Assembly: GCF_021869535.1 (NCBI RefSeq)
Contig: NW_026262667.1
Coordinates: 8,618,001 to 8,682,000, forward strand
Direction of reading: 5' to 3'
Source of the DNA: Mytilus californianus
Taxonomy: Eukaryota
Length of the DNA: 64,000 bases
Positions 14,548-41,128 of this stretch are shown piece by piece. Position 1 is the stretch's first letter. Every line of letters starts with the position of its first letter. Below the pieces are notes generated by a model, which had not been told where the DNA came from, made no database searches, and saw nothing but the letters and a program-made list of their open reading frames with translations. A program made the translations under genes and the position numbers.

Positions 14548-16577
14548 TTATGTCTGTGGTTGATAAGTATGTTGTTGTTGCTGTTGTTGCTGTTGCTGTT
14601 GAATAATCTGTTGTGACACAGGTATCTGTATACGTTTTTGCATTTCATTTTGATGGCTCATATTAAGTGGAGCATTGCCTGCATAAGCTGACGACTGGAT
14701 AGGAACCATAGTAGGGGGTCCACCTTCTATCTGAGCTATTACACCACCTTGTGCAGTGGTCGGTAGATTCTCTAAAAATCTTAAAGTCTCCATGTATCCT
14801 AATAATGTGGAAAATGTCTGAGACTGTTGTCTATTATCATTTGTCTGCACAACAGTTGGTCGATTGGTCTGGTCACGGTTCACTTGGTATTCAGCTGGTA
14901 TGACACCATTTGTTCTAATCATATCTAAATTAACATCTTTGTTTATAATTTGTTGTTGGGCAGGTTGCTGTTGGTTTGCCAGGTACATTGTGCCGTGTGT
15001 TTGCACCTGATGTTGTCGATACTCATTAGTTTGAGCATTTGGATCCATACCTTGCTGTTGATGACGTATGGCACCCCCACTAACATCTATGTATCTTTGA
15101 TCCGTTAACTGCATCTGCGATCCAATTGAAGTAACCTGCATACTTTGCATTTGAGCAGGTATATGTTGTTGCTGATGTATATTCTGCATATTTGACATAT
15201 TAATCACAGACTGAGCATTATTTTCATACAATTGAATAGGAACGGCTAATTCACGGCCGTCAGCTGTTTGCATGGTATGATAAATGCTGTTAATGTTTGG
15301 TTGTGATGTGACCAGCACTGTTGGATCTTCCCTCGGAATATTAAGAGCTTGAAACACTGCAGCACTAACTTTTTCATACTCCTTCAATTTTTCTTTCCTT
15401 TCTCCTCTAGGTGCTCTAGGAGGTTTGTTAGCATTGTCACCACTATGAGAGGATCTCAAATGACGAGTCAGGTGATCCTTGCGTCCAAATCTTTGTGGAC
15501 AGTATTGACATAAGAAGTCTTTTTTCTTTGTATGAGTAATCATGTGTCTTCTCACATCTTTCCTTGTATAAAACTTCTTTCCACATTCAGGGCAAGCATG
15601 TATTTTTTCTGTACAGTTTTTCACTGAACGGGCACCACTGTGTACTTTCAAATGATACAATAATTCTTCCCTAGTCTCATGCTGCTTGTGACAAATTCCA
15701 CACTCTGTCGACCTTCCTGCATCGGCATCGTGAAATGCCTTGTGAGTTCTGTAGGAAAAGTTGTAAGAATATTCCTTTCCACACTCTTCACACACCCATC
15801 TTTTCTTATTTGGATCATGAGTAATCATGTGATTTTTCAGGTGATCTTTACGATTGAATGACTTGTCACAATAAGGACACTTGTGATGACGGGGACAGGT
15901 ATGAATCAAACGATGTCTTTCTAATTTAAATTTGGACATAAATCCTTTAGAACATTCAGCTACTTCACAAATAAACGGTTTGACTCCAGTATGGTCAGAT
16001 ACATGTATTACAAACAATGCTTCTTTTGTAAATGTTTCTGTGCAATGGGGACATTGCATTGGTTCACGTCTAGATGCCCTAGGTCCACGAGGAATCCTTC
16101 CCTTTTTACGACCACGTCTACGTGGCATAGGTTCAGGATAATCTTCGTCTGCTCCCAATATTTCATCTAACATTTCTGTAGTTGTCTTCTCCTCATCTTC
16201 CTCATCGTCCATGACTTGTTCCATGTACGCTTTATCTTCTGGTTCCCCATCTAGAACCTGATCATCAGGTGTCTCCTCAACTTGTAGGGGTGGAGGAATA
16301 TCCAAGGCTGGTCTTTTATTTTTGGGAGGTCTCCCTCTCCTTCTTGGTGGAAGAGTCTGTGAAGGATCGACAACCTTAGCTTTTAACATTCTAGACTTCT
16401 CCAGTCTAGCTCTCCAAGTTTTGGATGGTTTGATATACTTTCTTGGCCTTCCTTTCCTGGGTCTGCCCCTTAATCTACGACTGTCAGGTGGAAGTCCTGG
16501 ACACAGGTGGGCTTCTAGATCAGCAAAAGCACTGAAACCATCATAGCAAACTGAGCACACCCACTTCGCAGCCACAC
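14548..16577 (-). CDS. PLAG1: PR/SET-PLAG zinc-finger gene, coding exon 6: C2HC-like finger, AT-hooks, seven PLAG-type C2H2 fingers, Q-rich C-terminus
   Basis: Acceptor ttgtattatag at 16579-16578, phase 1. Finger array ...KFKLERH...RKDHLKNH..THDPNK...FYTRKDVRRHM..H..KDFLCQYC.QRFGRKDHLTRH is the PLAG1/PLAGL2 signature. AT-hooks RGRPRK, GRPRK, RGRPPK. The symbol denotes a PLAG-family pro-ortholog. Confidence 0.93.
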
Positions 16578-21436: not shown

Positions 21437-22426
21437 GGTTTTAATTTAAACTGTGAAATTGAATTGATATCAACAGCATTTACAAAACCTTTATCCTTAT
21501 AAAATACCTGCATGAAATAAATTATACTTGTTAATGAAATTAACACTTTATAAAACATGTGCATCTGAATCAGGAACGCTCAAACTCGAACATTTGAAAG
21601 CCAAAGATATGAAAATATGCTGCAACCATGAGCTATATGACCAAAAAGAATTCATGTGTTTGGATGGTGAAACTTGTTGTTTCAAACAAACCATCACTAC
21701 AATTTAGGCTGTAATTGATCATGAGTGATTGTCGTTTGCTGCTGTTTAACATATTATTTTTTTTGTTTATTGTTTTGTACATAAATCAGGCTGTTAGTTT
21801 TCTTGTTTGAAATATTTTACATAAATTTGTCATTTCGAGCCTTTTATACATGTAGTGTGTGTGGTATGGGTTTTGCTCATTCTTGAAGGCTGTATGGTGA
21901 CCTATAGTTGCTTACTTCTACACCATTTGGTCTCTGGTGGAGAGTTGTCTCATTGGCAATCATACAACATCATCTTATTTTAAATGCAATCCTGAACCAA
22001 GTCACCTCTGAGTTTAATGTTATAAATGTTTGTTGTTTGTTGCTATTTACCTTTGCTACTCATTGACTATGAAGAACATATTACTGATGATGAAAAACAA
22101 TTCATTTATATTGGACATATTTTAAGGCATGGCCATCTTAAAAGATCAAAAGATTGAAGTTTTGTGTCATGATTTTGAAATATTTTAAACTATTGCAATC
22201 ATTTACCGTATATACATGTATTGTAGTTATTTTTTTTATCTTTTAAGTCTGTTATAACAATATTATATGGTTGTGTACATAAATTTGTAGAAGCAAACAC
22301 AATTTCAATATAAAACTAAAAACAAAAGAGAATGTAAGCACCATTGTTTCAACAACTTGAACCCAGTTGACAAAATGAATATGCATAAATATTAATGTAC
22401 ACAAAATGTAAGTTTTAAAAGCAAAC

Positions 22427-23463
22427 CTTAATCTCGTAGGTATAATCTAGTTCTTTTTCTTCTGTTTCCTTTTCCTTTCCCCCTGTCTGTTCTGTAACTT
22501 CTGTGGCATGAGGTTCATCAGTGGTGTTTTGCGGCCGCTGGTCTGATTCACTGGTAAGTTCTGTAGGCAAAGGTTCAGTTGAGGCAAGAACAGCATTTTG
22601 CTGTAATGACTCAGTAGTATTATGCTGCATGTGTTCAGTTGAAGGCAAAGTAGTATTTTCCAGTGAAGAAAGAGACATACTACTTGGTGGTAAGGGTTGT
22701 TGATCAGAAGTCATGTTCTGAAGTTCCTGTGTGGCTACAGCTATTTGATGCTCTAAAAGCTGTGTTTCTGTTAATCCTTCACTAACATAACTATCTGCTG
22801 GTGTTATACCAGCCTCAATTGAAGCTTGCAGAGTTAGGTCTTGTGACAATTGTGGTTGTTCAAACTGACTGACAGCTGTATCCCCAGACAATGTTGTCAC
22901 TATATCTAATGCCTGCTGTGGAGTATAGCCACCAGATAAATGTTGTAGCCCTGCATCACCGTAAGGACCAGCATGTAAACAGTTCTGGATGTTCATTATC
23001 TGTGTAGCCTTGTCAATGTTCGGGTGTTGTAATGTAAAAGTATTGTTGTTCTGTTGTGTATATTGCTGAGATACTAACTGTTGTTGCATATTAGCAGTAT
23101 CAAACCCATCAATGTTCTGTAACAGTAAATGTCCTTCGTCATTGTGTGGGATCATTTCAGAACTGTTAATATGTTGTTGTTGTTGCTGGGTTTCAATGCT
23201 TAATTGTCTTTGAATGTCAGCTTCTTGTTGCTGAGAATTTTGAGGAATATTTTGTGAAATTTGGTTAGTTATTTCAGGCTCAATAAGTTGAACACTAGGT
23301 GTTCTTTCCTCAGTGGTTTCCTTAGAAATTGGTGATTTTTCATCTCTACTAACATCTGTTGTGTCTTTCTTTGGAGTATATTTTTCTGTTGATTTAACTT
23401 GTCCATATAGAGGTCCAAACTGTGATCTGCATTGTATTATTCTTTTAGCAAAGATACCATAAG
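22427..23463 (-). CDS. PLAG1: PR/SET-PLAG gene, coding exon 3 (PR N-terminal half + ~315-aa Q/T/S/E-rich insert + YTYEIK)
   Basis: tttgtttttcag|CT TAT GGT...ATT AAG|gtttgc, 1037 nt, phase 1->0. YGIFAKRIIQCRSQFGPLYG is the PR/SET start motif (GVFA...FGP). Confidence 0.88.
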
Positions 23464-23894
23464 CTGAAAAACAAAAGTATTGAAATGCAAAATAAATCAA
23501 AACTAATGTTCAGAGTGTTGATCAATATGTATCAATGCAGTCAGATCTATGTATGAACTGGTCTATTTACCAGATATTCTCTGTATTTGTAACACAAACC
23601 ACAAACAATTTACAGAACTAATTATCAAACAGTGACCTGTAGTTGCTAGCATCTACATTGTTTGGTCTCTGGTAGACAGATCTTGTCTCACTGGCAATCC
23701 TACCACAACATTTATATAATTAATTTTTATAAAGATGACAAATGTATTTATTTCCAGTTGGTTCCTAGTTACTGCACACCTACAGTGAAATCATTCAATA
23801 TTAGACAAAATCTTAACTTAATATTGTTAATAATTTAACAGTTAACATACTTTTTGGTGTATCTTTTCATACACAATTACAATGATATACTCAC

Positions 23895-24047
23895 ATGTTT
23901 TACCATCATCTGTCTTCACCTGCTTAATTACAAGACCAGCTGGGCATGTTAGTCGTGCTCTTGAGGGTATTGCATTATCAAAAACTTGTGTAAAACCACC
24001 ATGTTTCTTGCATATTCCTGGTACACTCTTGCCACAGTCATGGCACC
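23895..24047 (-). CDS. PLAG1: PR/SET-PLAG gene, coding exon 2 (PRDM zinc knuckle)
   Basis: ttttgaatag|GG TGC...ACA T|gtgagt, 153 nt, phase 1->1. (W)CHDCGKSVPGICKKHG...PSRARLTCP matches the WCxxC-x6-CxxHG...RAR knuckle of PRDM4/9/10/15. Confidence 0.9.
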
Positions 24048-24599
24048 CTATTCAAAAAGGAAATTAGTATAAAAACCTTCTCTTTACCTTGTCTCATTGT
24101 TACTGCATTAATCCTTAAACATGGAACTTTAAAAGGATAGAGAAGTTTAGTCAGATTAATCATATACTAACATTCAAGACTAAAACAGTTCTTAAACTAT
24201 AGATGATACATTGTTTTAATGTTTGGTAACCATACTTATTTTTTAATTACGAAAAATTTAAACAATTTTTTTGTCATGCTGTACATAGAATAGCTGAATA
24301 AACATGATAAAGGTATCAGTAGATTAAACAATACCCAGTTTCTTACAATTAATTTTTTTTAAATAAAATGTATATGGATTGTTTTTTTATATGTGATGAT
24401 TTTATGTTTCAGGTCACATTATAGCAATACATTGCTTACAATTACAATTTTCATTGTTCCTCTCATTTCTAAATCATTTTGCTGAAATTTGCCTGTTGCA
24501 TTCCATTCAAGGTCTAAAGCATACATAATACAGTCAAGGCATTCAAAAGATTTTGAGGCATGTATTTAAAGTAATAACCTACTTATGGGAAGATTGTAT

Positions 24600-25540
24600 C
24601 ATGATAAAATAAAAGTGACGCTACCCAAATTTGAACTTGATCTGAGTTTTGTGGTAATAAGCATTGTGTGTAAGTCTCATAACATTAGGTTGAGGCTAAC
24701 TTAAGTAGAGAACAGAAACTAAAAATTCAGCAATTTTTCTATTTGTAAACACACATAACTCTAGAACGGTTGTGTATAAGTTTTATAACATTTGGTTGAG
24801 ACAAACTAAAGTAAGGGAACGGAAACAAAAAAATTCAGCAATTTTTATGTTTATAAAGAGACATAACTCAAGAATGGTAAAAGTGTTGCCACCAAATGTC
24901 GTACTTAATCTGTATTATGTAGTAATAAGCATTGTGTATAAGTTTCATAACATTTGGTTGAGGCAAACTAAAGTTAGAAAAAGGAAACAAAAATTTTGTA
25001 CTTGATCTTAGTTTTGTGGTAATGAATATTGTGTATAGGTTTCATAATGTTTGGTTGGGGCAAACTTAAGTTACAGAATGGAAACTAAAAATTTGGCAAA
25101 CTTTCATTTTATAAAGGGGCATAACTCAATAATGGTTAAAGTGACACTACCCAAATTCAACGTGATCTGTGTTTTATCAGTGGAAGTCAAAATTAAACAT
25201 TGCATTGTATAAAGCATTGATTGTAGTTGATTCAACTATAATCATGGACAAAGGAAGATAAATCCAATTTTAAAAATTACTTGATATTTAGAAGAAAATA
25301 AAAATTTTGCAATTTTTCCATTTCTAAAGGGGCATAACTCTAGAACGGTTAAAGTGACGCCACCAAAATTCAAACTTGATCTGTGTTTTGTGGTAATAAG
25401 CATTGTGTATAAGTTTCACAACATTTGGTTGAGGCAAACTAAAATAAGAGAACGGAAACAAAAAATTCAGCAATTTTTCCATTTGAAAAGGGGCATAACT
25501 CTAGAACGGTAAAAGTGACGCTACGGCGGGGGCATAAAAA
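24600..25540 (+). mobile_element. Helentron/HINE-like element with ~160-bp tandem units
   Basis: Repeated gggcataactctagaacggt(t/a)aaagtgacg...aagcattgtgtataagtttcataacatttggttgaggcaaactaa, ending cggcgggggcataaaaa. Confidence 0.7.
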
Positions 25541-25634
25541 TATATGGTAAATTTGTGGTTAGGCTGTTTTAAATATATCCTACTTTCTCCCTATACAGAT
25601 ACATGTGGTGCTCCAGATTTTATTTTTTACTTAC

Positions 25635-25662
25635 ACAACTCGTCTTGCTTGTGGGATGACAT
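25635..25662 (-). CDS. PLAG1: PR/SET-PLAG gene, coding exon 1 (MSSHKQDEL); exon spans 25691-25635
   Basis: cattttag acceptor and TTGT|gtaagt donor. In-frame TAA upstream of the ATG. The phase-1 T joins GG to give W of WCHDC. The full CDS sums to 3525 nt = 1174 aa + stop. Confidence 0.8.
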
Positions 25663-27984
25663 GACTGCTTAGCCAATCCTACTGGTACACACTAAAATGC
25701 AAAAACAACATGACATGTACATAACGAAAGCCAGCACAATGTGCTTGTTTATATACATGTGTATGCATGTACAACTACAATGTGATATATATTTAACTAT
25801 CAAACTAATTAAAATGATTTTTATGTACTGTAAGCAGTAAAACTGATCACGTTATTGTCAATTTAAATAAATAAAGCAATAAAATTCACTTCTGCAACTA
25901 CATTTGTACTGCATGTTTATTCTTACTTCTCTTGATATGATCAATGATTATCAACAATTGAATGCTAATTCTCCAGATAACACCATACATTTTGTATGTA
26001 TAAAACAGTAAAATTTTCTTAATGACATATCTAAACTTAACCAAGGAGCTTGTATGTTCATGCAGCATTTTTGCATAAAACTGCTAGAACATGCAGAATG
26101 CAATACGATTATTTCTGGCAAAGGAGCAAAAAATTGAATATTTTACTCATTCAAGGGCAACAACTCTTATAAAGAGTTGAATGACCATTTTTGCCATTTT
26201 GATTTCGATTTGATTATTTTTGCTCTATTAGTTTTCACTTTATCTTTTATCTAAGAATTATAAAACAAAAATCATTAAAACTTGGTAAAAATCGTATTTA
26301 AGGGCAATTACTCCTACTTATGGAATGGTCCATCAGTTTTTGTTAAAATAGGCAGTAGGTAGCTCTTGAGATTCTGAAAATTTCTGCCCTGTCATTGTTT
26401 TACTTTATCGATACATGTCTATATAAAGGTTTAAAAGATAGTAAACAATACTTGTTTTTTACCCTAATGTTCTTTTTTTACACTTTTTTGTCATATTGGT
26501 TAGCAGCACATGGTGCATTGGCCGTATCAAAATGAGATTGTTACTATTAAACTACCGAAATGAAAAACTGAATTTCCTTGACGTACTAGAATTAATTCTT
26601 TTTTTTAAGTCTATTAAGTAAAACCTTGCACAGACATAAAGCCTTTATTACAATGTGACTGTTTGTTAAATATCAAAACTGTTCATTTTCATCTGAATGC
26701 AATGTCAATATTAGAAATTCATCACAAAAACCAACAGATTGATTCTTGGTGTTTAATGCCACTTTAATCACATTTAGATATATCATGGCGGTCAGTTTTT
26801 ATTGTAAAATAACAAACAATATATATTGGTCTCCATTTTCCAGGCAGCTGAACTTCTACTAGTTTTTATCCACAGAAATCAATTTAGTGTATACAAAAAA
26901 TTAAGTTGATTTCATAAAATGCTCAAAATGAGATTTTTGTAGTTTTCAGTAAAAATTTGAGATAGAAAATACCAACAATCCTTTGATCTGTTACTTTGTC
27001 AATTGCAATTTTTAGTTAAGATACACATTTCTTCAGCTCACTTCAGCTAAGAAATACTTATCTTCAGAAGTCTACTCTATAAAATTTGAAAGTCTGAATC
27101 GATTGAATGAAAAATAGTGAATGAAAAATTTACGAGTGTTTTAACATAAATTCTTTTATTCTTTATATGATTTATCAGGTTTATATCATAGGAAAATTTA
27201 TTTGGAATTTGTTTAAAGTGAAAAATTGACAAGCTGTGTTCAATAAATTGAAACAAAGTACTGTAAATTAATGAGTGTAAATACTAAAGTGTTTGTACAT
27301 TTGTACATGATGTATGGCGGTTCAAATTCGTGAAAAATAAATTAAATATTCCCTACATGTATTCCAGTACCCCATTTCTACCCTCTTTAAATTTTTTAAA
27401 ACCATTCAATTTTCATTTTCATAATTTTGAACAAATGCATACATGCATTATATATGCATTATAAATCCTAAAAGATTTTTTTTTCTTTTTGTAAATATGC
27501 TTTCTCTCTCATGGTCAGTGGCATTCATTGGTTGTATGTAATCTTGAGCAATCATTGAAACTTTTATTGGAAAGTTATCCATTTACATTTAATGTGTGTT
27601 CCCTTTAAATAATCATGATTATTAGGGGCCATAAGACCACACAGCATAATGATTCATATGTTCTAATGATCAATATGCTGACAAAGCTCAATTTCATGAC
27701 AGAAAATTTCATAACAGCTGCAGACTGAAATATACAAAACACGACAAACGATAAACCAATGATTATGGTAAATAATTTGTTGTTTATTTAAAGTATTTTA
27801 TTCATAATAATTTGGAAACCTTGAATCCACTCTCGAGCAACACAGTCGGTGGAGGTACCAGGGAGGGGTCAACCATTCAGAGGCATTTTCGGGTGTACGG
27901 ATTATTTGTTTCATTATTATCAGTTTCTTCAAAGCTGTTAAGCTTCAAGGAACCAAAGTACAGACTTTTTAATATGATTCTTAC

Positions 27985-28190
27985 CCTTATTAACCAAAGC
28001 TTTGACGTTCTATTTTAGTTTTGTAGACAAAGAAGGGTTTTGTCCCAATGATGGCCATTATCGCATTGCATTATGGGATCGCCAACACAAAATTACGTCA
28101 GTATTCCAAAATGGCAGCGCCCATGTAGAATGTAAACAAACAACCGACTGAAGGACATTTACATAAGAAATATTAAAGATAACTAAAAAT
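27985..28190. promoter_or_regulatory. Bidirectional promoter between PLAG-like gene and CHCHD7, with ZNF143/Staf-like and YY1-like motifs
   Basis: 28062-28079 reverse complement ATCCCATAATGCAATGCG resembles the Staf/ZNF143 site; CAAAATGGCAGC at 28107-28118 resembles YY1. A minus-strand donor (AAGG|gtaaga, exon end 27985) suggests a non-coding PLAG exon 1; the CHCHD7 ATG is at 28191. Confidence 0.6.
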
Positions 28191-28373
28191 ATGCCAGAAA
28201 TGTCCACAGATGATTTTGACCAAAGACATAAGAGTGCGAACGAGATAGTTGAAGAACGACGAAGAAAAACAATTGAAGATAAGAGGAAGAGGGTGAATGA
28301 GATTGTAGAAGAAAATAGAAAGAGAGTGGCCAAGGAAAAATTGGAAGCCGTACTAAGACATCCATGCAATCGT
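28191..28373 (+). CDS. CHCHD7: CHCHD7 (COX23 ortholog) coding exon 1
   Basis: MPEMSTDD...VLRHPCNR|gtaaga, 183 nt, phase 0. HPC corresponds to human NPC, the first Cys of the twin CX9C motif. Confidence 0.85.
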
Positions 28374-28869
28374 GTAAGACAACTTACTAATTGCCCTTTC
28401 TAAACTAATTGTCCAATCACATTGATTACAAAGGCCTTGACATTCTGTTGTCAAATTTTGAGTCTGGGACACCCCCCCCCCCCCCCGAATTCTAGTCACT
28501 TCGACACCTGGTTAAATCAGCACCTGGTCAATTCGGGACCTAATGTATTAAGTACACAGGAAATATAAAAAAAAACAATTAAAATTACAATGATTAAATT
28601 TGTTTTTATCCTCATATGTGGATGCTTCTTTGTTTTATCTCAGTTATTTTAAATATAAAACATCAAAAACTACCTGAAAATGGTTAAAATAACAAGCAGG
28701 TTATTCCATAATTTTTTTAAATGATACCCAATCAAACTTAGTTAATTAAATACTGAGAAAACTTCAAACAGCACACTTCTGCTTCTGCTTCTGCCTGATA
28801 ATGGCCACAATCAACGAGCTGATTATTATGCCATGACTTAGGTGTGCATACAGACCCCCTCCCCCCAAT

Positions 28870-29230
28870 TTGATAATTTAGTTCAGCTTTGTCAGTGAGG
28901 CTTTAAAGGCCTCGACTGACGATGCTGATGCTACCCCAGGAGGGAGAGCGTTCCAATCCCTGATATTTCTCGGGAAAAATGAGTATTTCCTGTATTCATT
29001 TCTGGATGCTGGAATTTGGAAACTTTTGTCGTGCATGTTCCTCGACAGTCGTGTTGGTTGCATAAGACGACCTTCCTTAATTACAGCCACTTTGTGGTTT
29101 TGTTATTTTATAGAGCATAGTTAGTCTAGCGTCTTTTCGCCTTTTTTCCAGAGATGGCCATTCCAGGTGCTCAATCATTTTGCTGACACTTGAGTGGTTA
29201 TGGTGTTTCAGTAAACAACTGATTATTTTT
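28870..29230 (-). mobile_element. LINE (CR1/L2-like) ORF2 3' end
   Basis: SSVSKMIEHLEWPSLEKRRKDARLTMLYKI...YRKYSFFPRNIRDWNALP...SSVEAFKASL, a typical LINE C-terminus. Confidence 0.75.
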
Positions 29231-29329
29231 TATTGTGTATTCTAACAGCTTAATTGCATGCGCTGATTTTTGAATCGGGGTCCGTTTTGTCATGTGAATT
29301 TCTCACTTATTATGAGTAATATGATAACT

Positions 29330-30180
29330 ATATTTGGTATATGGGTTCCTTGCAACGTCTACATGTCCGTCAGACAGAGTTCACCTGACCTCAACCTCAT
29401 TTAATGGATCAGTGATCAAGGTTTAAATTTCGTGTTTAGGTCTATTTCTCAAATACTATAAGCAGAAGGTCAGCTATATTTGGTGTATGGAATGATTGTA
29501 ATGGGCACATGTCAGTCTGGCAGGTATCATCTGAACTTGACCTCATTTTCATGGTCCATTGGTCAATGTTAAGTTTTGTGTTTTTGTCTGTTTTTCAAGT
29601 ACTATAAGCAATAGGTCAAATATATTTGGTGTATGGAAAGATTGTAAGGTGTACATGTCTGTCTGGAAGGTATAATCTGACCTTGACCTAATTTTTATGG
29701 TTCATAATCATTGGTCAATGTTAAGTTTTTGTGTATTTGTCTGTTTTCCAAGTACTATAAGCAATAGGTCAGCTATATTTGGTGTATGGATAAGTTGGTA
29801 TGGAATAATTGTAAGGTGCACATGTCTGTCTGGCAGATATCATCTGACCTTGACCTCACATTTATGGTTCATTGGTCAATGTTAAGTTTTTGTGTTTTTG
29901 TCTGTTTTTCAAGTACTATAAGCAATAGGTCAACTATATTTAGTGTATGGAATGATTGTAAGGTGTACAAGTCTGTCTGGAAGGTATCATCTGACCTTGA
30001 TCTAATTTTTATGGTTCATTGGTCAATATTAAGTTTTTGTGTTTTTGTCTGTTTTCCAAGTACTATAAGCAATAGGTCAGCTATATTTGGTGTATGGAAT
30101 AATTGTAAGGTGCACATGTCTGTCTGTCTTGACCTCACATTTATGGTTCATTGGTCAATGTTAAGTATTTGTGTTTTGGT
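29330..30180. repeat. Tandem ~147-bp units (gcaataggtcaactatatttggtgtatggaatgattgtaagg...); related degenerate units at ~42050-42440
   Basis: gcaataggtc anchors at 29608, 29761, 29922 and 30069. Confidence 0.8.
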
Positions 30181-30184
30181 CTGT

Positions 30185-32235
30185 TTTTATACGACCGCAA
30201 AAAAATTTTGAGGTCGTATATTGGTATGACGTTGGCATCATGATCGTCGTCCGAAGACACATTGGTTTTCGCACTCTAACTTTAGTTTAAGTTAATGGAT
30301 CTCTATGAAATTTTACCATAAGGTTCAATACCACAAAAGGAAGGTTGGGAATGATTTTGGGGGTTATGGTACCAACAGTTAAGGAATAAGGGGCCAAAAA
30401 TAAGCATTTTTGTAACTTCCAGACAAAACTTGTGAGTTAGTGTATGGATCTCTCTGACATTGTACAAAAAGGTTCCATATCTCAAAGGGAATGCTGGGAT
30501 TGATTTTGGGGGAAATTGCCTCAAAATTTTAGGAATTAGGGGCCAAAAAAGGGGCAAAAAACAAGCATTTTTATATGGACAAATTCTTTAGTACAAAACA
30601 TAATTTAAAGCAGTGTAAGGGAGATAAATCAAATACATCATTTGAATTACCTCCCTTACACTGCTTTTAAATTATGTATAAAGTAATGGTTAATGAACAA
30701 TTAAGACAATTTAAAACAGTGTAAGGGAGGTAATCCACATACAACGTTTTGATTACTTCCCTTACACTGCTTTTAAATTATGTTTAAAGAAATGCATATT
30801 TATAAAGGAAGACCAGTAAAAATATCTGCAAATGTTGCATCTTTTTTTTTTTACAAAAAAATCCATATGAAATATTTGACACCATATTTTAAATTCTATT
30901 ATAAAATAGACTAAGTTAGCACTATGGTAAATTTAAATGGGTAATTATGGTTGCAAATTCCATTGGAAATTTGAATTGAGATTATGACCATATCTTGAGG
31001 GAAAGATTTTTTGGGGGAAAAGGGGGGGGGGGGGGTAAAAAGAAATTGTGGGGGTCAATTTTTTCTCATTTCAGATTTAAAAAGAATTATTCTTCAAATA
31101 TTATTTTTTTTTTCAAATTTCAAATATTGAAAAATTTCAAGAAGTAATCTTTAATTGCACAGTATGGCGCATTAGATTTGTAAAATCTTTGACCACATTT
31201 ATTTATTTGTTATGCCATATCTGAACTTGTATTTAGATTTTTAATTTTGGGTCCAGTTTTCATATTGGTCTACATTAAGGTCTAAAGGGTCCAAAATTAA
31301 ACTTAGTTCGATTTTAACAAAATTGAATATATGGGGTTCTTTGATATGCTGAATCTAAACATGTATTTAGATTTTTGATTTCGGGCCCAGTTTTCAAGTT
31401 GGTCCAAATTGGGGATCAAAATTAAACTTTGTTTGATTTCAACAAAAATTGAATATATGGGGTTCTTTGATATGCTGAATCTTACCATGTATTTAGATTT
31501 TTTATTTGTGGGCCCTGCTATCAAATTGGTTCATATTGAGGTCACAAGGGTCCAAAATTAAACTTTGTTTTATTTCATCAAAAATTGAGATATTGGGGTT
31601 CTTTGATATGCCAAATCTAACCTGTATTTAGATTTTTAATTTTGGGTCCAGTTTTCAAATTGGTCTACATTAAGGTCCAAAGGGTCCAAAATTAAACTTA
31701 GTTTGATTTTAACAAAAATTGAATTCTTGGGGTTCTTTGATATGCTGAATCTAAACATGTGTTTAGATTTTTGATTATGGGCCCAGTTTTCAAGTTGGTC
31801 CAAGTTGGGGTCCAAAATTAAACTTTGTTTGATTTCAACAAAAAATGAATATATGGGGTTCTTTGATATGCTGAATCTAACCATGTATTTTGATTTTTGG
31901 GCCCCGTTATCAAATTGGTCCACATTGAGGTCAAAAGGGTCCAAAATTAAACTTTGTTTGATTTCATCAAAAATTGAATCTTTGGATTCTTTGATATGCT
32001 GAATCTAACCATGTATTTAGATTTTGGATATTGGACCATAATAGGTAAATTAAAAAATTTTAAGTTCTTAGACCACATTCATTCTGTGTCAGAAACCTAT
32101 GCTGTGTCAAATATTTAATCACAATCCAAATTCAGAGCTGTATCAAACTTGAATGTTGTGTCCATACTTGCCCCAACTGTTCAGGGTTCGACCTCTGCGG
32201 TCGTATCAAGCTGCGCCCAGCGGAGCATTTTATTT
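30185..32235. mobile_element. Helentron/HINE-like element (~2 kb) with subterminal inverted repeats, twin palindromes and a central higher-order tandem array
   Basis: Perfect 11-bp inverted repeat atacgaccgca (30189-30199) / tgcggtcgtat (32196-32206). Terminal hairpin atacgacc...ggtcgtat. ~130-bp units from 31200 to 32040. Confidence 0.75.
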
Positions 32236-33737
32236 TTTATATGAAATCATTTTTAATATGTACATGATGTAGTAGGCGACTGGAATTAAAATTATTGAAA
32301 AAAGTTTAATATATATATTTTATAATGGATGGAAAATGCATATTTCCCAGAAAGTCTTCACAATTTATTCAAGAAAGTGTTGAACTTTTCAATTATAGGC
32401 AACTTCCAGTTTATAATTGAAAGTCTCCTTGCTAAAATGGGACAAACATTGAAAAGATCGGAGGTAATATTTTGTCACTAGATTTCCCACTGTATACTAG
32501 TATAATAGTCCCAGGTAATACTTCTACATTCGAGCAATGTTTGATCAATAACCATTATTAAATGGATTTTGCTTTTATGTATTTATGGTATTATTCTTTT
32601 AAATAAGATGTAAATTTATGGGGAAAAAAACTAAAAATATTATTGAAATGAATTAGTCCTATGCTGTTTGGCTTCATTTATAGTTTAGCAATTAATTAGA
32701 ATAAAAAGTATATGTGTGGTTTGGTTTCCTAACTGTCCATTTTTTTTCCCTTTCTTATAAAAATAAAAAGTTAAAAATAGCATCCTTGACTTCTCTTGGA
32801 TTTATTTATTGTTGTTTTTTTTACAAACTTGTAAGTAAATCCAAACAGACTTATTTTAAATTCAGCAAAGTTATTTTTTTGTTTTTTTTAATATTCGTTC
32901 ATTATTTCTGTCAGACCACTGGACAATTGAAATAAAATGTGAACTTTTGTCATGAAAAAGGTTCCTTAGAATTATAGAACTGTATAATGCCTTATTATGA
33001 TCGTTTTTTTCTTCCCCAACATCTTCGAATTCCTTAGTTGGGTCTTCACTTCTCCAGTCTGTTTGGTTGCCAGGGATAAATCACATCTCCCTAAAATTCT
33101 GAAGTGTGGTCACCTCTGATCAACCAACATTGAGGTAACATGTACATTTTCTAAAATCATTACTAATCATACACAAAGATAAGTGAATATCATCCTTTCT
33201 ATAAAAAAAATAAGAAATAAAAAAAAATAATTAAAGCTCTACCTACCTACCCTATTTTTTATTTGAATGAAACCAGAACCACACATACTTTTTTATTTGG
33301 CCTTATGTGTAATAAATTTTATCTCCATGACTGTTTAAATGACTACAATTCACATGAAGCTTTGGTGGTTTAATTTTGAAAGTAACATCTTTGTAAAGTA
33401 AACTAGTAAGCTAAGAAAAAGTTAAAATAGTGAATAGGTTTTTAGGCAAAAAGGATGAAAACCATATGGAAAAAAAATCTCCCTCTGTTTGCTCATGAAT
33501 TCCAATATTCTCCACTTTAAATGGTTGAATTTTTCATCTAAAAATTAACTATTTTGAGTGAAGAAGTAATGTACCTGAACTCATCCACAACAGAAGGAGA
33601 GTCTAGATATCAAAATCACTTTCAGGAAAATTTAAAGACAAATTATTGAACTTTTATATTGATTTAAATTTCTATCTGCCTCAAGCTAAAATATCAAATT
33701 AAATGTGAATATCCTTAATTTGTTTTTTGCATTATAG

Positions 33738-33836
33738 GAGAAAGAAATGTCATATCAATGTTTAGAAGATAATGGCTATGATAGAAGTAGATGTGAAATG
33801 TATTTTGAAAATTACAGAAACTGTTCCAAGTTTTGG
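33738..33836 (+). CDS. CHCHD7: CHCHD7 coding exon 2 (CX9C core), followed by a GC donor
   Basis: ttttttgcattatag|GAG...TTT TGG|gcaagt. EKEMSYQCLEDNGYDRSRCEMYFENYRNCSKFW aligns to human [34 protein letters not shown]. Confidence 0.92.
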
Positions 33837-34339
33837 GCAAGTATTTAATCAAATTAGTTTTGTGTAAGTTACCTAACAGTTACATGTATGCAAAATTTAG
33901 ATATGACTATAAATATTTGGCTTATTCAGTCTTACATACAGTTGCTTTTCTTTATCAGGCGTCACCAAAATCTAACATGTTATATCATGAGAGATTTCTT
34001 AAGAATGATTGCACTGCATTACTAATGTAAAATAAGGAGATGTGGTATGATTACAAATGAGACAACTGAGTCCAAATGATGTGGATTTAAGCAACTATAG
34101 GTCATCATACAGCCTTCAACAATGGGCAAAAGCCATACTGTAAAGTCAACTATAAAAGGCCCCAACATTTATTTGAACCATCATTAGGATGGCAAGATTC
34201 ATTGATCTTAGAACACTATATATCATCAGTTATATTAAATGAACCAACTCAACAAATGAGGGTTGTGTATTGATATGCTTTTGTTGAAATGAAATCCATT
34301 GAAACAATGAGTTGAAGCAAATTAAGTTTTGTGTTGCTT

Positions 34340-35012
34340 CTCTATCAGCGTTAACACTACACTGTTCCCAGCCAAGATGATTTCCATAACTGTGAGTAGA
34401 GGTTGTTGCCACATAGATCTACCATTGTTCCCAGCCAAGATGATTTCCATTACTGCGAGCAGGTTTTTTTCCCACTTTTCCCACTGTTCTCAGCAAATAT
34501 TATTTCCGTTAATGTAAGCTGAGCAGTGGTTGTTTTCCCTTTGCAACTGTTCCCAGCCAAGATTATCTCCATTGTTGACAACTTGTGAGAAGGGGTTGTT
34601 TCCTAATCTGCCACTGTTCAGAGCGAAGATGATTTCCGTTACTGTGGGTACAGTAGAGGTTATTCCACATCTGCCACTGTTCCAAGCCAGGATGATTTCC
34701 GTTACTGTGAGTAGAGGTTGTTTTCACATCTGCCACTGTTCCCAGCCAAAATGATTTCCGCTACTGTGAGAAGAGGTTGTTTTCACATCTGCCACTGTTC
34801 AGAGCCAAAATGATTTCCGTTTATACTGTGAGTAGAGGTTGTTTTCACATCTGCCACTGTTCCCCGCCAAGATGATTTCCGTTTTTGTGAGGAGAGATTG
34901 TTTCCACATTTGCCACTGCTCCAAGCCAAGATGATTTCCGTGACTGTAAGCAGTGGTTTTTATTTCCACTTCTCCGACCGTTCCCAGCGAAGATAATTTC
35001 CATTATTGTGAG
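34340..35012. repeat. 59-bp minisatellite (ctgtgagtagaggttgtttccacatctcccactgttcccagccaagatgatttccatta), left block
   Basis: Directly visible degenerate tandem units. Confidence 0.85.
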
Positions 35013-35013
35013 A

Positions 35014-37500
35014 AAAAGAGAGATGAAAGATACCAAAGGGAATTCAAACTCATTGTCGAAAATAAACTGACAACGCCATGGCAAAGTAAAATAGACCAAA
35101 AGACAAACAACAGTATACAATACACAGCATAGAAAACTATTAAAGACTGGTCAACACAAACCACACTAAAAACCGGGGTGATCTCAGGTGTAAGCAGATC
35201 CTGCTCCACATGTAGCACCGTCGTGTAGCTCATGTAAGTACAAACCCGTGATAAGTCTTATTCAGTAGGTCATATTTGAGGAAAAGGAGGACGTGATTGT
35301 GGTTACGACGATGTTCCTGATGAAGGTAAATCTTCGTCCATAAAATTTTCGTAGGGATGATTTCGACTTCACCACTTGGAAGTCTTGGTTTAAAAGCTTC
35401 CTCGTGAGCAGCAACACTCTACCAAGGAATCATGATAGAAAACGCAAACCCTGGAATATCGTATCAACTGGGAGATATATACTCCATATGCAGGCGCTGT
35501 TGGAATGTTGCTACATAGAAATGGAAAGTTCACAATTGGGAAGCTGATATCATCTCTCTTGTTGTAAAGTTTTGTTCTCAACAGACCCTCATTGTCAATT
35601 TCTAGATGTAAGTCAAGATATGAGGCAGACTTAACTGTATCTGTTGTATCCTTTATTTCAAGTTGATGGGATAGATAGGTTCAATAGTCTCCAAACTTTA
35701 TAAATTATTTAGTAAGAGGGCATCATCTTTTTAGCGGAAAGTGAAGTTAAAGGATAATGCTAGCTCTTTTTCATTCTTCATAAGAAGGTCCTGTATGAAG
35801 TTAGTCTCATATGAATAAAGGAACAAGTCGACAAGAAGAGGAACACACTTGGTTCCCTTGGGAATGCCGATTGTTTGTTGAAAAACACGTCCTCCAAACG
35901 TAACAAATATGTTGTGAATCAAGGAATCAGGCATGTTGATAATGTCACTAGACAATTTCAGAGAATTTTTTGTTTGGACTCAGAAGTACGATTTTTTCTT
36001 CCCTAGGACAAGATATTTGTATCTACGTTGGCCATTCTTTTTTATAAAAAATTTGTCTTTTAGTTTGAAATGGGGAATACTTGTGTAAAGTGTAGAAAAG
36101 TTAAATTTTTTAATACTATTGCCAGATGAAAGAGTTTTAGATTGTATGTTCTCTAACAGATCTTTGGATTTTTTTAGTATCCACATCTAATTCACGCCGC
36201 CTCTAGAGTATGTAATTTCACTATAACTTTAAGGCCCGGCTTTGATTGCTGATAAAATTTGTTAATAATTTAGAAACAGGTTTCGTGGAGCACTTGAATT
36301 GATTGATTGATTGGTCTTTAACGCCACTTTCAGTACCTTTGTGCTATTTCTTGGCGGTCAGTTTTATTGGTGGAGGAAGCCAGACTGCCCGGAGAAAACC
36401 ATTGACCTTCGGTAGGACAAATGACAATCCTAGTCAATTAAGATTGGCGTCGAGCGCACCTACCGCGTGCGGGATTCGAACTCACAACCTCAGTGTGGAC
36501 AGGCTAGTGATACAGTAGTTTGACTACTTAGACCACTCGGCCACCGAGGTCCCTGGAGCACTTGTAAGACCAAGCAATATAACGTTGTTTGTAAGGCTAC
36601 TTATATAATTTAGGTATCCAATACAGCGAATGAAGATCAAGTTCTTTATCCTTGGTTGAAATTCCAAAGGAACATATAAAAGACCTATGATTATCCAGGA
36701 TTTCCTCCTTAGTAAGTGTCGTTGGCTTATATGTTGAGGTTCCAAATAAATTGTCAATACCTATTTCATTCATCAAGCAGTCTATGTAATGTGATTCACA
36801 CACAAAAACGATGTTGTTTGGGGCTTTATCTGCGGGACAACAACACATTTGTCATGGAAGTAGGGTAGGCCAGGTTCTTTGCAACATTTGGGTCTTTAAA
36901 GATTGATGTAGCATATGTATTCATAGACCCATTCAGTTTTTTTAATTTTGATTTGTATGAACGACCTCACAGCCATAATCCATTCGGAAAGAGTATCTAC
37001 GTCTTCTCGCGTTTAATCCATTGCCTGGCATAATCCTCGGCTGAATCTATCTGTATTTCAAAGTTGTGTTTCCGATTGATGGATTTAGGCTCACGATATT
37101 TCGAGCCTTTGTATAGCACATTTTGCAGAGAAGTGTTATTGACAATGTTTATGTCACCAATAATAACGTGGTCAGTCGGATTATGTATGAAAGGGGAACT
37201 AGCGCAGGTGCAATCAAGAGGTTTAGACTTGAAGTCGTCAATATTGAGATCCTGCAACACGTGTTTGTAATTGGAAATTTTAGTTGCAATTGGTTTGGTA
37301 TAGGTTTAAGAAATGATAGGTACAGGCTGATTTTTAAAATAGGGAGGTATTTTCGAGTGAACTTATTTATGACGAAGGATATTGCCCAAGTTAATGGCAT
37401 CAAGACCTTTGTTGGCAAAGGAAATTTTAGAAAGGATCTTTTCTCCTCTTCATCTTTTCCAAATGTCTGTGACTAGCAATACCCGAGATGATAGCTGTAA
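35014..37500 (-). mobile_element. 5'-truncated, decayed Penelope-like retroelement (RT + 3' tail)
   Basis: Minus-strand fragments FANKGLDAINLGNIL, CTCASSPF...DHVIIGDINIV, PADKAPNNIVFVC, LYWIPKL, FSTLYTSIPH, QTIGIPKGTKCVPLLVDLFLYSYE, LYNKRDDISFPIVNFPFLCSNIP..PAYGVYISQLIRY. Many stops and frameshifts. Confidence 0.8.
36297..36553 (-). mobile_element. Full-length tRNA-derived SINE with V-domain-like core, inserted in the Penelope-like ORF
   Basis: Head gggacctcggTGGCCGAGTGGtctaagtag; B-box GTTCGAATCC; core ggttttctccgggcagtctggcttcctccacc; (TCAA)n tail. 11-bp TSD tggagcacttg at 36286-36296 and 36554-36564. Confidence 0.9.
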
Positions 37501-37814
37501 GTTTGTATTGGTTTGAATTGGGGTTTGTAACAGTTGTTTTTTTAAGCAAAAGTTGTACAGAAAATAACGTTTTGAAAGGGGTAGTGAATAAAACTTGGGG
37601 CGAATATGATGAATAACCAACGACTTTTGTATAAAACTATAAATGGCAGAACATCATTTATAGAGACATCATGGAGAGAAGTTGATGTATAATGACGATG
37701 ACCATGACTGCTTATATGTCGAGGAGTAGAGTTTAAAATGTTCATCACATTCACCGAGCTACAGACAGGACTAGATAGAATAGATAGGAAGCTATTAAAC
37801 CTAGAGTTCCAAGG

Positions 37815-41014: not shown

Positions 41015-41128
41015 AATCGTGTAAGCTGGGAAAGATTGTTCAGAGGCATTAAACCTTCAATTCCTCCTCCTGAAGAAAGAGATGCTATTAGAGAAGAATT
41101 TGCAAAAAGAAAGGGCTATAATTACTGA
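41015..41128 (+). CDS. CHCHD7: CHCHD7 coding exon 3
   Basis: tttatttttacag|AAT...TGA. NRVSWERLFRGIKPSIPPPEERDAIREE aligns to human [26 protein letters not shown]. Total protein 131 aa; AATAAA near 41778 and 41863. Confidence 0.9.
   Translation, partial: NRVSWERLFRGIKPSIPPPEERDAIREEFAKRKGYNY

What the first reader, a model, noticed from the sequence alone, without database searches (positions are those of the whole stretch)
25635..33836. Head-to-head PLAG-like / CHCHD7 pair, the same arrangement as human PLAG1-CHCHD7
Seen: the PLAG-like gene (minus) and CHCHD7 (plus, ATG 28191) diverge from a short region around 28.0-28.2 kb. Established: human PLAG1 and CHCHD7 are head-to-head neighbours on 8q12, and CHCHD7-PLAG1 promoter swapping occurs in pleomorphic adenoma. 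Inference: the pair dates back to the protostome-deuterostome ancestor, which also supports PLAG orthology of the PR-containing gene and suggests a long-constrained shared promoter.
Basis: partly seen in the sequence, partly recalled or inferred. Interest (0 to 1): 0.8.

Follow-up and report, generated by a model that had tools for sequence, protein, structure and literature searches.

The report
Ancient PLAG–CHCHD7 head-to-head gene pair
In this mussel genome a PLAG-family transcription-factor gene and the small mitochondrial gene CHCHD7 start back to back from one short promoter, as in humans, and the same pairing turns up in five invertebrate phyla, so it goes back at least to the common ancestor of protostomes and deuterostomes.

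Summary
CHCHD7 (+) has three exons: 28191-28373, 33738-33836 and 41015-41128, giving 131 aa.

RNA joints in four runs show that the PLAG-like gene (-) has a non-coding first exon. Its donor is at 27985 and it splices to the ATG exon 25635-25691. CHCHD7 transcript contigs begin at 28112/28118.

A CHCHD7 exon lies on the opposite strand just upstream of the PR-PLAG orthologue in seven species:
- Mytilus, Crassostrea and Babylonia (molluscs)
- Owenia (annelid)
- Lineus (nemertean)
- Ptychodera (hemichordate)
- Branchiostoma (amphioxus)

It was not found within 10 kb in a mayfly or beside a shark PLAGL1-type paralogue. Non-bilaterians could not be tested.

A composite of GCCAT box, ZNF143-like site and CRE sits between the genes in six species, against 0.35 expected by chance. 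The 126-nt mussel promoter finds the oyster and nemertean promoters (E 1.6e-8 and 2.8e-6).

This is a new member of a known kind: conserved 5'-5' microsyntenic pairs. The mussel gene is a pro-orthologue of PLAG1, PLAGL1 and PLAGL2 together.

The parts
14548..16575 (-). PLAG-like gene, large 3' exon ORF holding the seven C2H2 zinc fingers
   Evidence: ORF listing. Pfam zf-C2H2, E 1e-24. The finger region is 48-55% identical to vertebrate PLAG1/PLAGL2 and 100% identical to annotated Mytilus 'zinc finger protein PLAG1'. PLAG clade support 100.
22415..23463 (-). PLAG-like exon with the start of the PR domain and a long low-complexity stretch. The 5' boundary at 23463 is fixed by RNA; the 3' boundary was not determined here.
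   Evidence: Joint 23463|23895 in four runs and contig coverage of 22486-23463. Weak PRDM2_PR hit.
23895..24047 (-). PLAG-like coding exon 3 (zinc-knuckle region CHDCGKS...)
   Evidence: Joints 23463|23895 and 24046/7|25634/5. The frame is verified against the annotated proteins.
25635..25691 (-). PLAG-like exon 2, carrying the start codon at 25662-25660
   Evidence: Joints on both sides in four runs. The translation MSSHKQDELWCHDCGK equals P0002 and P0003.
27985..28100 (-). PLAG-like non-coding first exon. The donor at 27985 is exact. The 5' end (TSS) is not mapped and lies somewhere in about 28045-28200.
   Evidence: Joint 25691|27985 with GT..AG on the minus strand: 3 raw reads plus contigs of 3 runs. 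The PLAG-direction signal in bin 28001-28200 is 1.0 against 17 for CHCHD7, above the 0.7% strand leak seen in the next bin. No ATG lies in frame.
28054..28058 (-). GCCAT box. It reads ATGGC towards the PLAG-like gene and is YY1-like.
   Evidence: Present at the same relative place in six species.
28062..28079 (-). ZNF143/Staf-type SBS1-like site. On the minus strand it reads ATCCCATAATGCAATGCG.
   Evidence: Two mismatches to the 18-nt consensus. CCCR at positions 3-6 and C at position 12, as defined in PMC3082894. 14 of 18 positions match the bound SBS1 probe of PMC3627581. Conserved in position in six species.
28093..28100 (.). CRE/ATF-type site, TTACGTCA
   Evidence: ACGTCA is invariant in the five-species alignment. 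It lies 79-98 bp before the CHCHD7 ATG in four lophotrochozoans.
28108..28128 (+). YY1-like box plus conserved block AAAATGGCAGCGCCCATGTAG at the CHCHD7 transcript start
   Evidence: Nearly identical in Lineus and Crassostrea, partly so in Babylonia. CHCHD7 contigs begin at 28112 and 28118.
28112..28373 (+). CHCHD7 exon 1: 5' UTR from about 28112, CDS 28191-28373 (61 codons, ending ...HPCNR)
   Evidence: The intron position after PCxx is shared with six other species.
33738..33836 (+). CHCHD7 exon 2 (33 codons). It holds three of the four Cx9C cysteines and is followed by a GC-AG donor, GCAAGT.
41015..41128 (+). CHCHD7 exon 3: NRVSWERLFRGIKPSIPPPEERDAIREEFAKRKGYNY plus stop. It lies outside the finding's range.
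   Evidence: tblastn with the amphioxus exon 3, E 4e-4. Acceptor and frame checked.

Best explanation
This is an ancestral bilaterian head-to-head gene pair. One gene is the single PLAG-family (PR domain plus seven zinc fingers) transcription-factor gene. The other is CHCHD7, which encodes a twin-Cx9C protein of the mitochondrial intermembrane space. Both are initiated from one compact bidirectional promoter.

Shown:
- In the mussel, CHCHD7 transcripts start at about 28112.
- The PLAG-like gene starts with a non-coding exon. Its donor is at 27985 and it splices over 2.3 kb to the ATG exon.
- The same divergent neighbour is present in five invertebrate phyla and, from the literature, in mammals.
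- The roughly 90 bp between the two first exons carries a GCCAT box facing PLAG, a ZNF143/Staf-like site, a CRE, and an AAGATGGC box facing CHCHD7. Order and orientation of the GCCAT box, the ZNF143-like site and the CRE are conserved across six species. The AAGATGGC box is conserved among four lophotrochozoans only.

Inferred:
- These sites bind YY1-, ZNF143- and ATF/CREB-type factors and nucleate divergent initiation, as in vertebrate housekeeping and mitochondrial-gene bidirectional promoters.
- The pair has stayed together for more than 500 million years because the two start sites are too close for a breakpoint to fall between them without damaging at least one promoter.
- After the vertebrate genome duplications the linkage survived beside PLAG1, while the PR domain survived in PLAGL1.
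For: RNA joints and strandedness.

Gene models.

CHCHD7 identity: the best solved-structure match is human CHCHD7 for mussel, amphioxus, acorn worm and nemertean, and weakly for oyster. Intron positions and the C-terminal G-I/V-K-P..P..ER motif are shared.

Synteny, given as ATG-to-ATG distance:
- Mytilus 2528 bp
- Crassostrea 2187 bp
- Babylonia 1559 bp
- Owenia 1133 bp
- Branchiostoma 3604 bp
- Lineus 536 bp
- Ptychodera 2131 bp

Promoter: five-species alignment. A single-sequence nhmmer search with mussel 28005-28130 hits the oyster promoter (E 1.6e-8) and the nemertean promoter (E 2.8e-6) in 264 kb. The composite motif is found 6 times in 655 kb of strand-bases, always in this intergenic region and on the CHCHD7-sense strand, against 0.35 expected.

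Orthology tree.

Literature: human genes 500 bp apart head to head (PMC9405559). Bovine bidirectional promoter (PMC5359603). ZNF143 in bidirectional promoters (PMC3082894). Conserved 5'-5' microsyntenic pairs as a class (PMC3514665).
Against: - The PLAG-like TSS is not mapped to the base. It rests on low depth (about 1-3x) and on one contig that merges both genes.
- The motif composite was defined after seeing the sequences. For the two deuterostome invertebrates it is the only promoter-level evidence; profile searches did not reach them.
- The factor identities are motif matches only. I did not check that mussels have ZNF143 or YY1.
- The pair is missing within 10 kb in a mayfly and could not be assessed in a crayfish.
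- In cattle the lead promoter-region variant changes PLAG1 expression but not CHCHD7 expression in mammary tissue. A shared promoter does not have to mean co-regulation.
- In the mussel sample CHCHD7 signal is about 10-15 times that of PLAG.
Confidence: 0.82

Rival explanations
1. Passive retention. The pair is ancestral, but it survives only because the gap between the two start sites is tiny, so rearrangement breakpoints rarely fall there. There is no selection for shared regulation, and the conserved motifs serve CHCHD7 alone.
For: - The 5' ends are at most about 130 bp apart.
- CHCHD7 is far more abundant than PLAG in the sample laid.
- The bovine promoter variant affects PLAG1 but not CHCHD7.
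- The pair is lost in a mayfly without loss of the PLAG-like gene.
Against: - A GCCAT box faces the PLAG side and is conserved in six species.
- Sequence conservation between mussel, oyster and nemertean extends leftwards into the PLAG-side exon region, 28012-28058.
- Gene order is otherwise scrambled around the pair: the flanking genes differ in every species.
Confidence: 0.2
2. Genomic regulatory block. CHCHD7 is a bystander kept next to the PLAG gene because enhancers of this developmental transcription factor lie in CHCHD7 introns or beyond.
For: - PLAG is a developmental or growth regulator and CHCHD7 a housekeeping gene, the typical make-up of such blocks (PMC3514665).
- Mussel CHCHD7 has large introns of 5.4 and 7.2 kb.
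Against: - In the stretches read, those introns are dominated by repeats.
- CHCHD7 spans only 2.1 kb in amphioxus.
- The only non-coding conservation I found is at the promoter.
- Intron conservation was not searched systematically, so this is not excluded. It is also compatible with the main explanation.
Confidence: 0.12
3. The upstream exon at 27985 and above is not the real PLAG-like start. On this view it is antisense promoter noise of CHCHD7 that happens to splice to exon 2, and the true TSS lies elsewhere.
For: The depth of the PLAG-direction signal over 28001-28200 is low.
Against: - The 25691|27985 joint has canonical GT..AG ends. It is seen in raw reads and in contigs of three further runs from different studies and two coded organisms.
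- There is no coverage at all in 25801-27400, that is, upstream of exon 2.
- The ATG-bearing exon 2 has an acceptor at its 5' edge.
Confidence: 0.04
4. The adjacency arose independently (convergently) in different lineages.
For: None found.
Against: Seven species of five phyla plus mammals have the same two orthologues in the same divergent orientation, with a similar promoter composite, while the other neighbours differ.
Confidence: 0.01

Closest known systems
Human and bovine PLAG1-CHCHD7 bidirectional pair (8q12 in human, BTA14 in cattle)
   Same: The orthologous genes lie in the same head-to-head orientation with a sub-kilobase gap. PLAG1's first exon or exons are non-coding, which is what allows promoter swapping (PMC9405559; PMC5359603).
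   Different: The mussel partner is the unduplicated PR-domain-bearing pro-orthologue of PLAG1, PLAGL1 and PLAGL2.
Conserved ancestral microsyntenic pairs (CAMPs) of Irimia et al. 2012, coregulated 5'-5' class, for example HSPE1-HSPD1
   Same: A non-paralogous pair that is adjacent in both protostomes and deuterostomes, with conserved 5'-5' orientation and a very short intergenic distance.
   Different: The two products are not functionally linked in any known way: one is a nuclear transcription factor, the other a mitochondrial intermembrane-space protein. Whether this pair is in the published list is unknown, because the supplement is not held. The main text mentions neither gene.
ZNF143/Staf-dependent bidirectional promoters of vertebrates
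   Same: An SBS1-like site with CCCR at positions 3-6 and C at position 12 lies between divergent start sites, together with YY1-type boxes.
   Different: No binding data exist for any of these invertebrates. The site is AT-rich and not in a CpG island. The association with a CRE at fixed spacing is specific to this locus as far as I tested.

Membership tests
CHCHD7 / COX23 (twin Cx9C protein) | Two Cx9C motifs forming the CHCH fold | tested here: met
   C59-x9-C69 (PCNREKEMSYQC) and C79-x9-C89 (CEMYFENYRNC) in the spliced 131-aa product. Sub-threshold Pfam CHCH, COX6B and CMC4 hits on exon 2 alone.
CHCHD7 / COX23 (twin Cx9C protein) | Closer to CHCHD7 than to any other CHCH protein | tested here: met
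   The exon-2 peptide hits human CHCHD7 (2LQT) at E 3.1e-9, with COX17 next at 0.036. CHCHD7 is also the top hit for the neighbours in amphioxus, acorn worm and nemertean, and weakly (0.061) in oyster.
CHCHD7 / COX23 (twin Cx9C protein) | Mitochondrial intermembrane-space location and MIA40-dependent import | not testable with these tools
   Needs cell fractionation or imaging.
PLAG family (PLAG1, PLAGL1, PLAGL2) | Seven-finger C2H2 array of PLAG type, grouping with PLAG proteins rather than other zinc-finger or PRDM genes | tested here: met
   48-55% identity over the finger region to named PLAG1/PLAGL2 proteins, against 33% to a generic zinc-finger protein. The PLAG clade has support 100 and is separate from PRDM10.
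PLAG family (PLAG1, PLAGL1, PLAGL2) | One-to-one orthology with PLAG1 specifically | tested here: not met
   The three vertebrate paralogues form one clade (support 100) that excludes all invertebrate genes. The mussel gene is co-orthologous to all three.
Conserved ancestral microsyntenic pair (Irimia et al. 2012) | Adjacency of the same two unrelated genes in both protostomes and deuterostomes | tested here: met
   Three molluscs, an annelid, a nemertean, a hemichordate and a cephalochordate. Mammals from the literature.
Conserved ancestral microsyntenic pair (Irimia et al. 2012) | Conserved 5'-5' orientation and short intergenic distance | tested here: met
   Divergent in all seven species. 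ATG-to-ATG distance is 536-3604 bp.
Conserved ancestral microsyntenic pair (Irimia et al. 2012) | Listed in the published set | not testable with these tools
   No supplementary files are held. No paper holds both 'CHCHD7' and 'microsynteny'.
Bidirectional promoter | Start sites on opposite strands less than 1 kb apart | tested here: met
   The PLAG first-exon donor is at 27985 and CHCHD7 contigs start at 28112/28118. One RNA contig is continuous across both.
Bidirectional promoter | Both directions depend on shared elements, or the genes are co-expressed | not tested
   Only one read-laying run was allowed. Needs reporter assays or multi-tissue expression data.
ZNF143/Staf binding site (SBS1) | 18-nt motif with CCCR at positions 3-6 and C at position 12 | tested here: met
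   ATCCCATAATGCAATGCG on the minus strand at 28062-28079. Definition taken from PMC3082894.
ZNF143/Staf binding site (SBS1) | Actual occupancy by a ZNF143 orthologue | not testable with these tools
   Needs ChIP or gel shift. The presence of a mussel ZNF143 gene was not checked.

The most novel reading that the evidence does not exclude
The GCCAT / ZNF143-like / CRE core between the two genes may be a true bilaterian-wide conserved non-coding element. On this reading it has been retained from the protostome-deuterostome ancestor and is still present at the vertebrate PLAG1-CHCHD7 promoter, the same few hundred base pairs that carry the bovine stature variants and are swapped in pleomorphic adenoma. 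That would make it one of very few promoter elements traceable across phyla, and a natural handle on how PLAG1 dosage is set.
Probability: 0.35. Interest if true: 0.7.

Novelty: new member of a known kind. Interest (0 to 1): 0.55.

Why it matters
PLAG1 dosage controls body size in cattle, humans and other mammals, and its promoter is hijacked in salivary gland tumours. In cattle the causal stature variants lie in the promoter shared with CHCHD7.

This head-to-head arrangement, with a recognisable set of promoter sites, predates the protostome-deuterostome split. That gives an evolutionary baseline for which parts of that promoter are constrained.

It also anchors the orthology of the invertebrate PR-domain PLAG genes. 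After the vertebrate genome duplications, ancestral features were split between paralogues: the CHCHD7 linkage stayed with PLAG1 and the PR domain stayed with PLAGL1.

For genome evolution, it adds a well-documented case of a 5'-5' pair whose non-coding core is alignable between phyla.

Tried and rejected
- **Protein search with CHCHD7 exon 1.** It found only a 72-aa read-through ORF from a related mussel. The length filter excludes the 131-aa product, so I approached synteny from the PLAG side instead.
- **First model for the end of CHCHD7 exon 2.** I first placed it at 33840 with a GT donor. That broke the frame. Comparison with six species showed the exon ends at the Trp codon (33836) and uses a GC donor.
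- **First boundary between PLAG exons 2 and 3.** It was one base short and gave no start codon in frame. It was corrected from the '+1 cut' note.
- **Profile search for the promoter in deuterostomes.** A profile built from five lophotrochozoan promoters found nothing significant in amphioxus or acorn worm. Only the motif composite links them.
- **Look-ups that returned no locus.** Mytilus trossulus P0003, Lingula P0030 and Asterias P0133. The crayfish gene was too long for DNA to be served.
- **Literature.** No paper holds CHCHD7 together with 'microsynteny' or 'ZNF143'. Supplements of the two microsynteny papers are not held. The plant uORF paper that mentions CHCHD7 concerns a different CHCH clade.
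- **Chance adjacency and convergent origin** were considered and rejected (see rivals).
Full report
**What the window is.** The sequence is AT-rich (about 30-37% G+C) and comes from a Mytilus-type mussel. The zinc-finger region of the minus-strand gene is 100% identical to proteins annotated in M. galloprovincialis and M. trossulus. The N-terminal part differs at several residues, so the exact species is not settled. No sequence taken for human was fetched, saved or compared. Human CHCHD7 appears only as a Protein Data Bank hit.

**CHCHD7 gene model.**
- My first model extended exon 2 to 33840 and broke the frame.
- In six other species this exon ends at the same Trp codon followed by GT. The mussel has GCAAGT there, a GC-AG intron.
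- Exon 3 lies at 41015-41128, outside the finding. It encodes NRVSWERLFRGIKPSIPPPEERDAIREEFAKRKGYNY.
- The product is 131 aa with two Cx9C motifs.
- Exon 2 alone matches human CHCHD7 (2LQT) at E 3.1e-9, against 0.036 for COX17. Pfam gives only sub-threshold CHCH-type hits on so short a piece.

**PLAG-like gene and its 5' end.** I laid one stranded raw RNA run and contigs of three other runs on 22401-28400. This gave three minus-strand introns with canonical ends:
- 23463|23895
- 24047|25635
- 25691|27985

The start codon is at 25662 in the 57-nt exon 25635-25691. The translation MSSHKQDELWCHDCGKS... equals the annotated Mytilus proteins.

The exon whose donor is at 27985 is therefore a non-coding first exon. 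There is no coverage at all between 25801 and 27400.

CHCHD7 contigs begin at 28112 and 28118 and end at the exon-1 donor. One 2011-nt contig runs without a break from 27985 to 28374 and carries PLAG exons on one side and CHCHD7 on the other. So reads tile the whole interval.

In the stranded run, PLAG exons have first mates on + and CHCHD7 on -. Over 28001-28200 the PLAG-direction depth is 1.0 against 17. That is well above the 0.7% leak seen over 28201-28400.

The two 5' ends are thus at most about 130 bp apart and may overlap. The exact PLAG start is not mapped.

**Orthology of the PLAG-like gene.**
- The finger region finds named PLAG1, PLAGL2 and PLAG1-like proteins at 48-55% identity, against 33% for a generic zinc-finger protein.
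- A search with the PR region of the amphioxus protein shows PR-bearing PLAG proteins in hemichordates, echinoderms, sharks, and in turtles, alligator and birds. In the sauropsids (turtles, alligator, birds) they are annotated PLAGL1; the shark proteins are mostly labelled PLAG1-like but group with PLAGL1 in the tree.
- A maximum-likelihood tree was built from 31 proteins and 710 columns with a quick search. It gives a PLAG clade (support 100) apart from PRDM10 and a vertebrate clade (100). The vertebrate clade holds PLAGL1 (the PR-bearing forms) and PLAG1 plus PLAGL2. The invertebrate genes lie outside it, roughly following the species tree.
- Several lophotrochozoan branches are long, so the fine order is unsure.
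- The mussel gene is the pro-orthologue of all three vertebrate genes, and the PR domain is ancestral.

**Microsynteny.** I used the genomic look-up for PR-PLAG orthologues with 10-kb flanks, then ran tblastn with the mussel CHCH exon. The distance given is ATG to ATG.

| Species | Phylum | CHCHD7 upstream, opposite strand | Distance |
|---|---|---|---|
| Mytilus (window) | Mollusca | yes | 2528 bp |
| Crassostrea virginica | Mollusca | yes, 118-aa gene | 2187 bp |
| Babylonia areolata | Mollusca | yes, 107-aa gene | 1559 bp |
| Owenia fusiformis | Annelida | yes; the annotation fuses it to PRKCSH | 1133 bp |
| Lineus longissimus | Nemertea | yes; not annotated | 536 bp |
| Branchiostoma lanceolatum | Cephalochordata | yes, 109-aa gene | 3604 bp |
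| Ptychodera flava | Hemichordata | yes, 123-aa gene | 2131 bp |

- All seven share the intron after PCxx, the intron after FW, and a C-terminal G-I/V-K-P..P..ER motif.
- The exon-2 peptides of amphioxus, acorn worm and nemertean hit human CHCHD7 best (E 1e-5 to 2e-7). The oyster peptide does so only weakly (0.061).
- The outer neighbours differ in every species, so only this pair is kept.
- No CHCHD7 exon was found within 10 kb of the mayfly PLAG1-like gene.
- None was found within 10 kb of the shark PLAGL1-type paralogue. That is expected if the linkage stayed with PLAG1 after duplication.
- The crayfish gene was too long for DNA to be served.
- For mammals I rely on the literature: the human genes lie head to head 500 bp apart (PMC9405559), and cattle have a bidirectional promoter carrying the stature variants (PMC5359603).

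**The promoter.** Aligning about 200 nt upstream of the CHCHD7 ATG from five lophotrochozoans shows conserved blocks. In mussel coordinates they are:
- a GCCAT box at 28054-28058, which reads ATGGC towards PLAG
- an 18-nt ZNF143/Staf SBS1-like site on the minus strand at 28062-28079
- a CRE, TTACGTCA, at 28093-28100, whose ACGTCA core is invariant
- AAAATGGCAGCGCCCATGTAG at 28108-28128, where the CHCHD7 contigs start

The SBS1-like site has CCCR at positions 3-6 and C at position 12, as defined in PMC3082894. It matches 14 of 18 positions of the probe bound in PMC3627581.

As an independent test, I used the mussel 126 nt alone as an nhmmer query against all eight fetched loci (264 kb). The best hits were the oyster promoter (E 1.6e-8) and the nemertean promoter (E 2.8e-6). 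The gastropod hit fell at the right place but was not significant.

A profile of the five sequences did not reach the deuterostomes. By eye, however, amphioxus and the acorn worm have the same order of GCCAT, SBS-like site and TGACGT.

I then defined a composite: an SBS with at most 6 mismatches to the literature consensus, GCCAT within 25 nt upstream, and a CRE half-site within 48 nt downstream.
- It occurs six times in 655 kb of strand-bases.
- Every occurrence lies in this intergenic region and on the CHCHD7-sense strand.
- The six species are mussel, oyster, gastropod, nemertean, amphioxus and acorn worm.
- First-order Markov resampling gives 0.35 expected, with a maximum of 2 in 20 replicates.
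- The composite was defined after seeing the data, so these numbers overstate the significance somewhat. The absence of any off-target hit is the stronger point.

**How it most likely works.** The evidence fits a compact bidirectional promoter. Two outward-facing YY1-type boxes flank a ZNF143-type site and a CRE. CHCHD7 initiates to the right and the PLAG non-coding exon to the left.

The factor identities are inferences from motifs. ZNF143 is documented in vertebrates as a driver of bidirectional promoters, and a listed paper's title (PMC11687419) names it as a regulator of nuclear-encoded mitochondrial genes.

Retention over more than 500 million years is best explained by the start sites being too close to separate without damage. 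Whether shared regulation adds to this is open. CHCHD7 is about 10-15 times more abundant than PLAG in the sample laid. In cattle the lead variant alters PLAG1 but not CHCHD7 expression in mammary tissue.

A regulatory-block explanation, with PLAG enhancers inside CHCHD7, is not excluded and was not tested systematically.

**Novelty.** Conserved 5'-5' microsyntenic pairs are a described class (PMC3514665), and the mammalian pair is well known. I found no paper that reports the pair outside vertebrates. The published pair lists could not be read.

I therefore rate it a new member of a known kind. The added value is the promoter conservation across phyla and the complementary retention of ancestral features in PLAG1 (linkage) and PLAGL1 (PR domain).

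Noticed in passing
window 33837-41014: CHCHD7 intron 2 uses a GC-AG donor (TGG|GCAAGT), whereas six other species have GT at the same codon. Lineus CHCHD7 intron 1 also has a GC donor (GCAAGC, L007 about 9359).
   Followed up: partly
L003:4367-8867 (Owenia) and L007:8367-9464 (Lineus): Annotation gaps in public genomes. The Owenia CHCHD7 start codon is used as the start of a 662-aa 'PRKCSH' model, a likely fusion of two genes. Lineus CHCHD7 is not annotated at all.
   Followed up: partly
proteins P0124-P0128, P0048, P0056; tree: Shark and sauropsid PLAGL1 proteins carry a full PR/SET domain and form the PLAGL1 clade. The PR-plus-PLAG architecture is therefore ancestral, not a mussel peculiarity. 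The PLAG1 and PLAGL2 proteins sampled carry no PR/SET hit, so the domain appears lost on that branch; mammalian PLAGL1 was not examined here.
   Followed up: partly
window 24600-25600: SINE-like repeats lie in PLAG-like intron 2. Read depth runs to the hundreds in raw RNA and contig depth up to about 97,000, with many internal 'joints' between copies. This is a highly expressed repeat family, unrelated to the gene's own expression.
   Followed up: no
window 28191-28360: Mussel CHCHD7 has a lysine/glutamate-rich N-terminal extension of about 58 aa with an internal repeat (ANEIVEERRRK... / VNEIVEENRKR...). The N-terminal exon is shorter in the other species (35-55 aa before the PC motif) and very short in the human protein.
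   Followed up: no
window 28123-28128: The conserved promoter block contains ATGTAG, a start codon followed at once by a stop, inside the CHCHD7 5' UTR. It is identical in Lineus but not in oyster. It could be a minimal uORF or simply part of a factor site.
   Followed up: no
window 29300-30200 and 31200-32050: CHCHD7 intron 1 is filled with tandem arrays of two repeat units, each about 120-190 nt, which inflate the gene to 13 kb.
   Followed up: no
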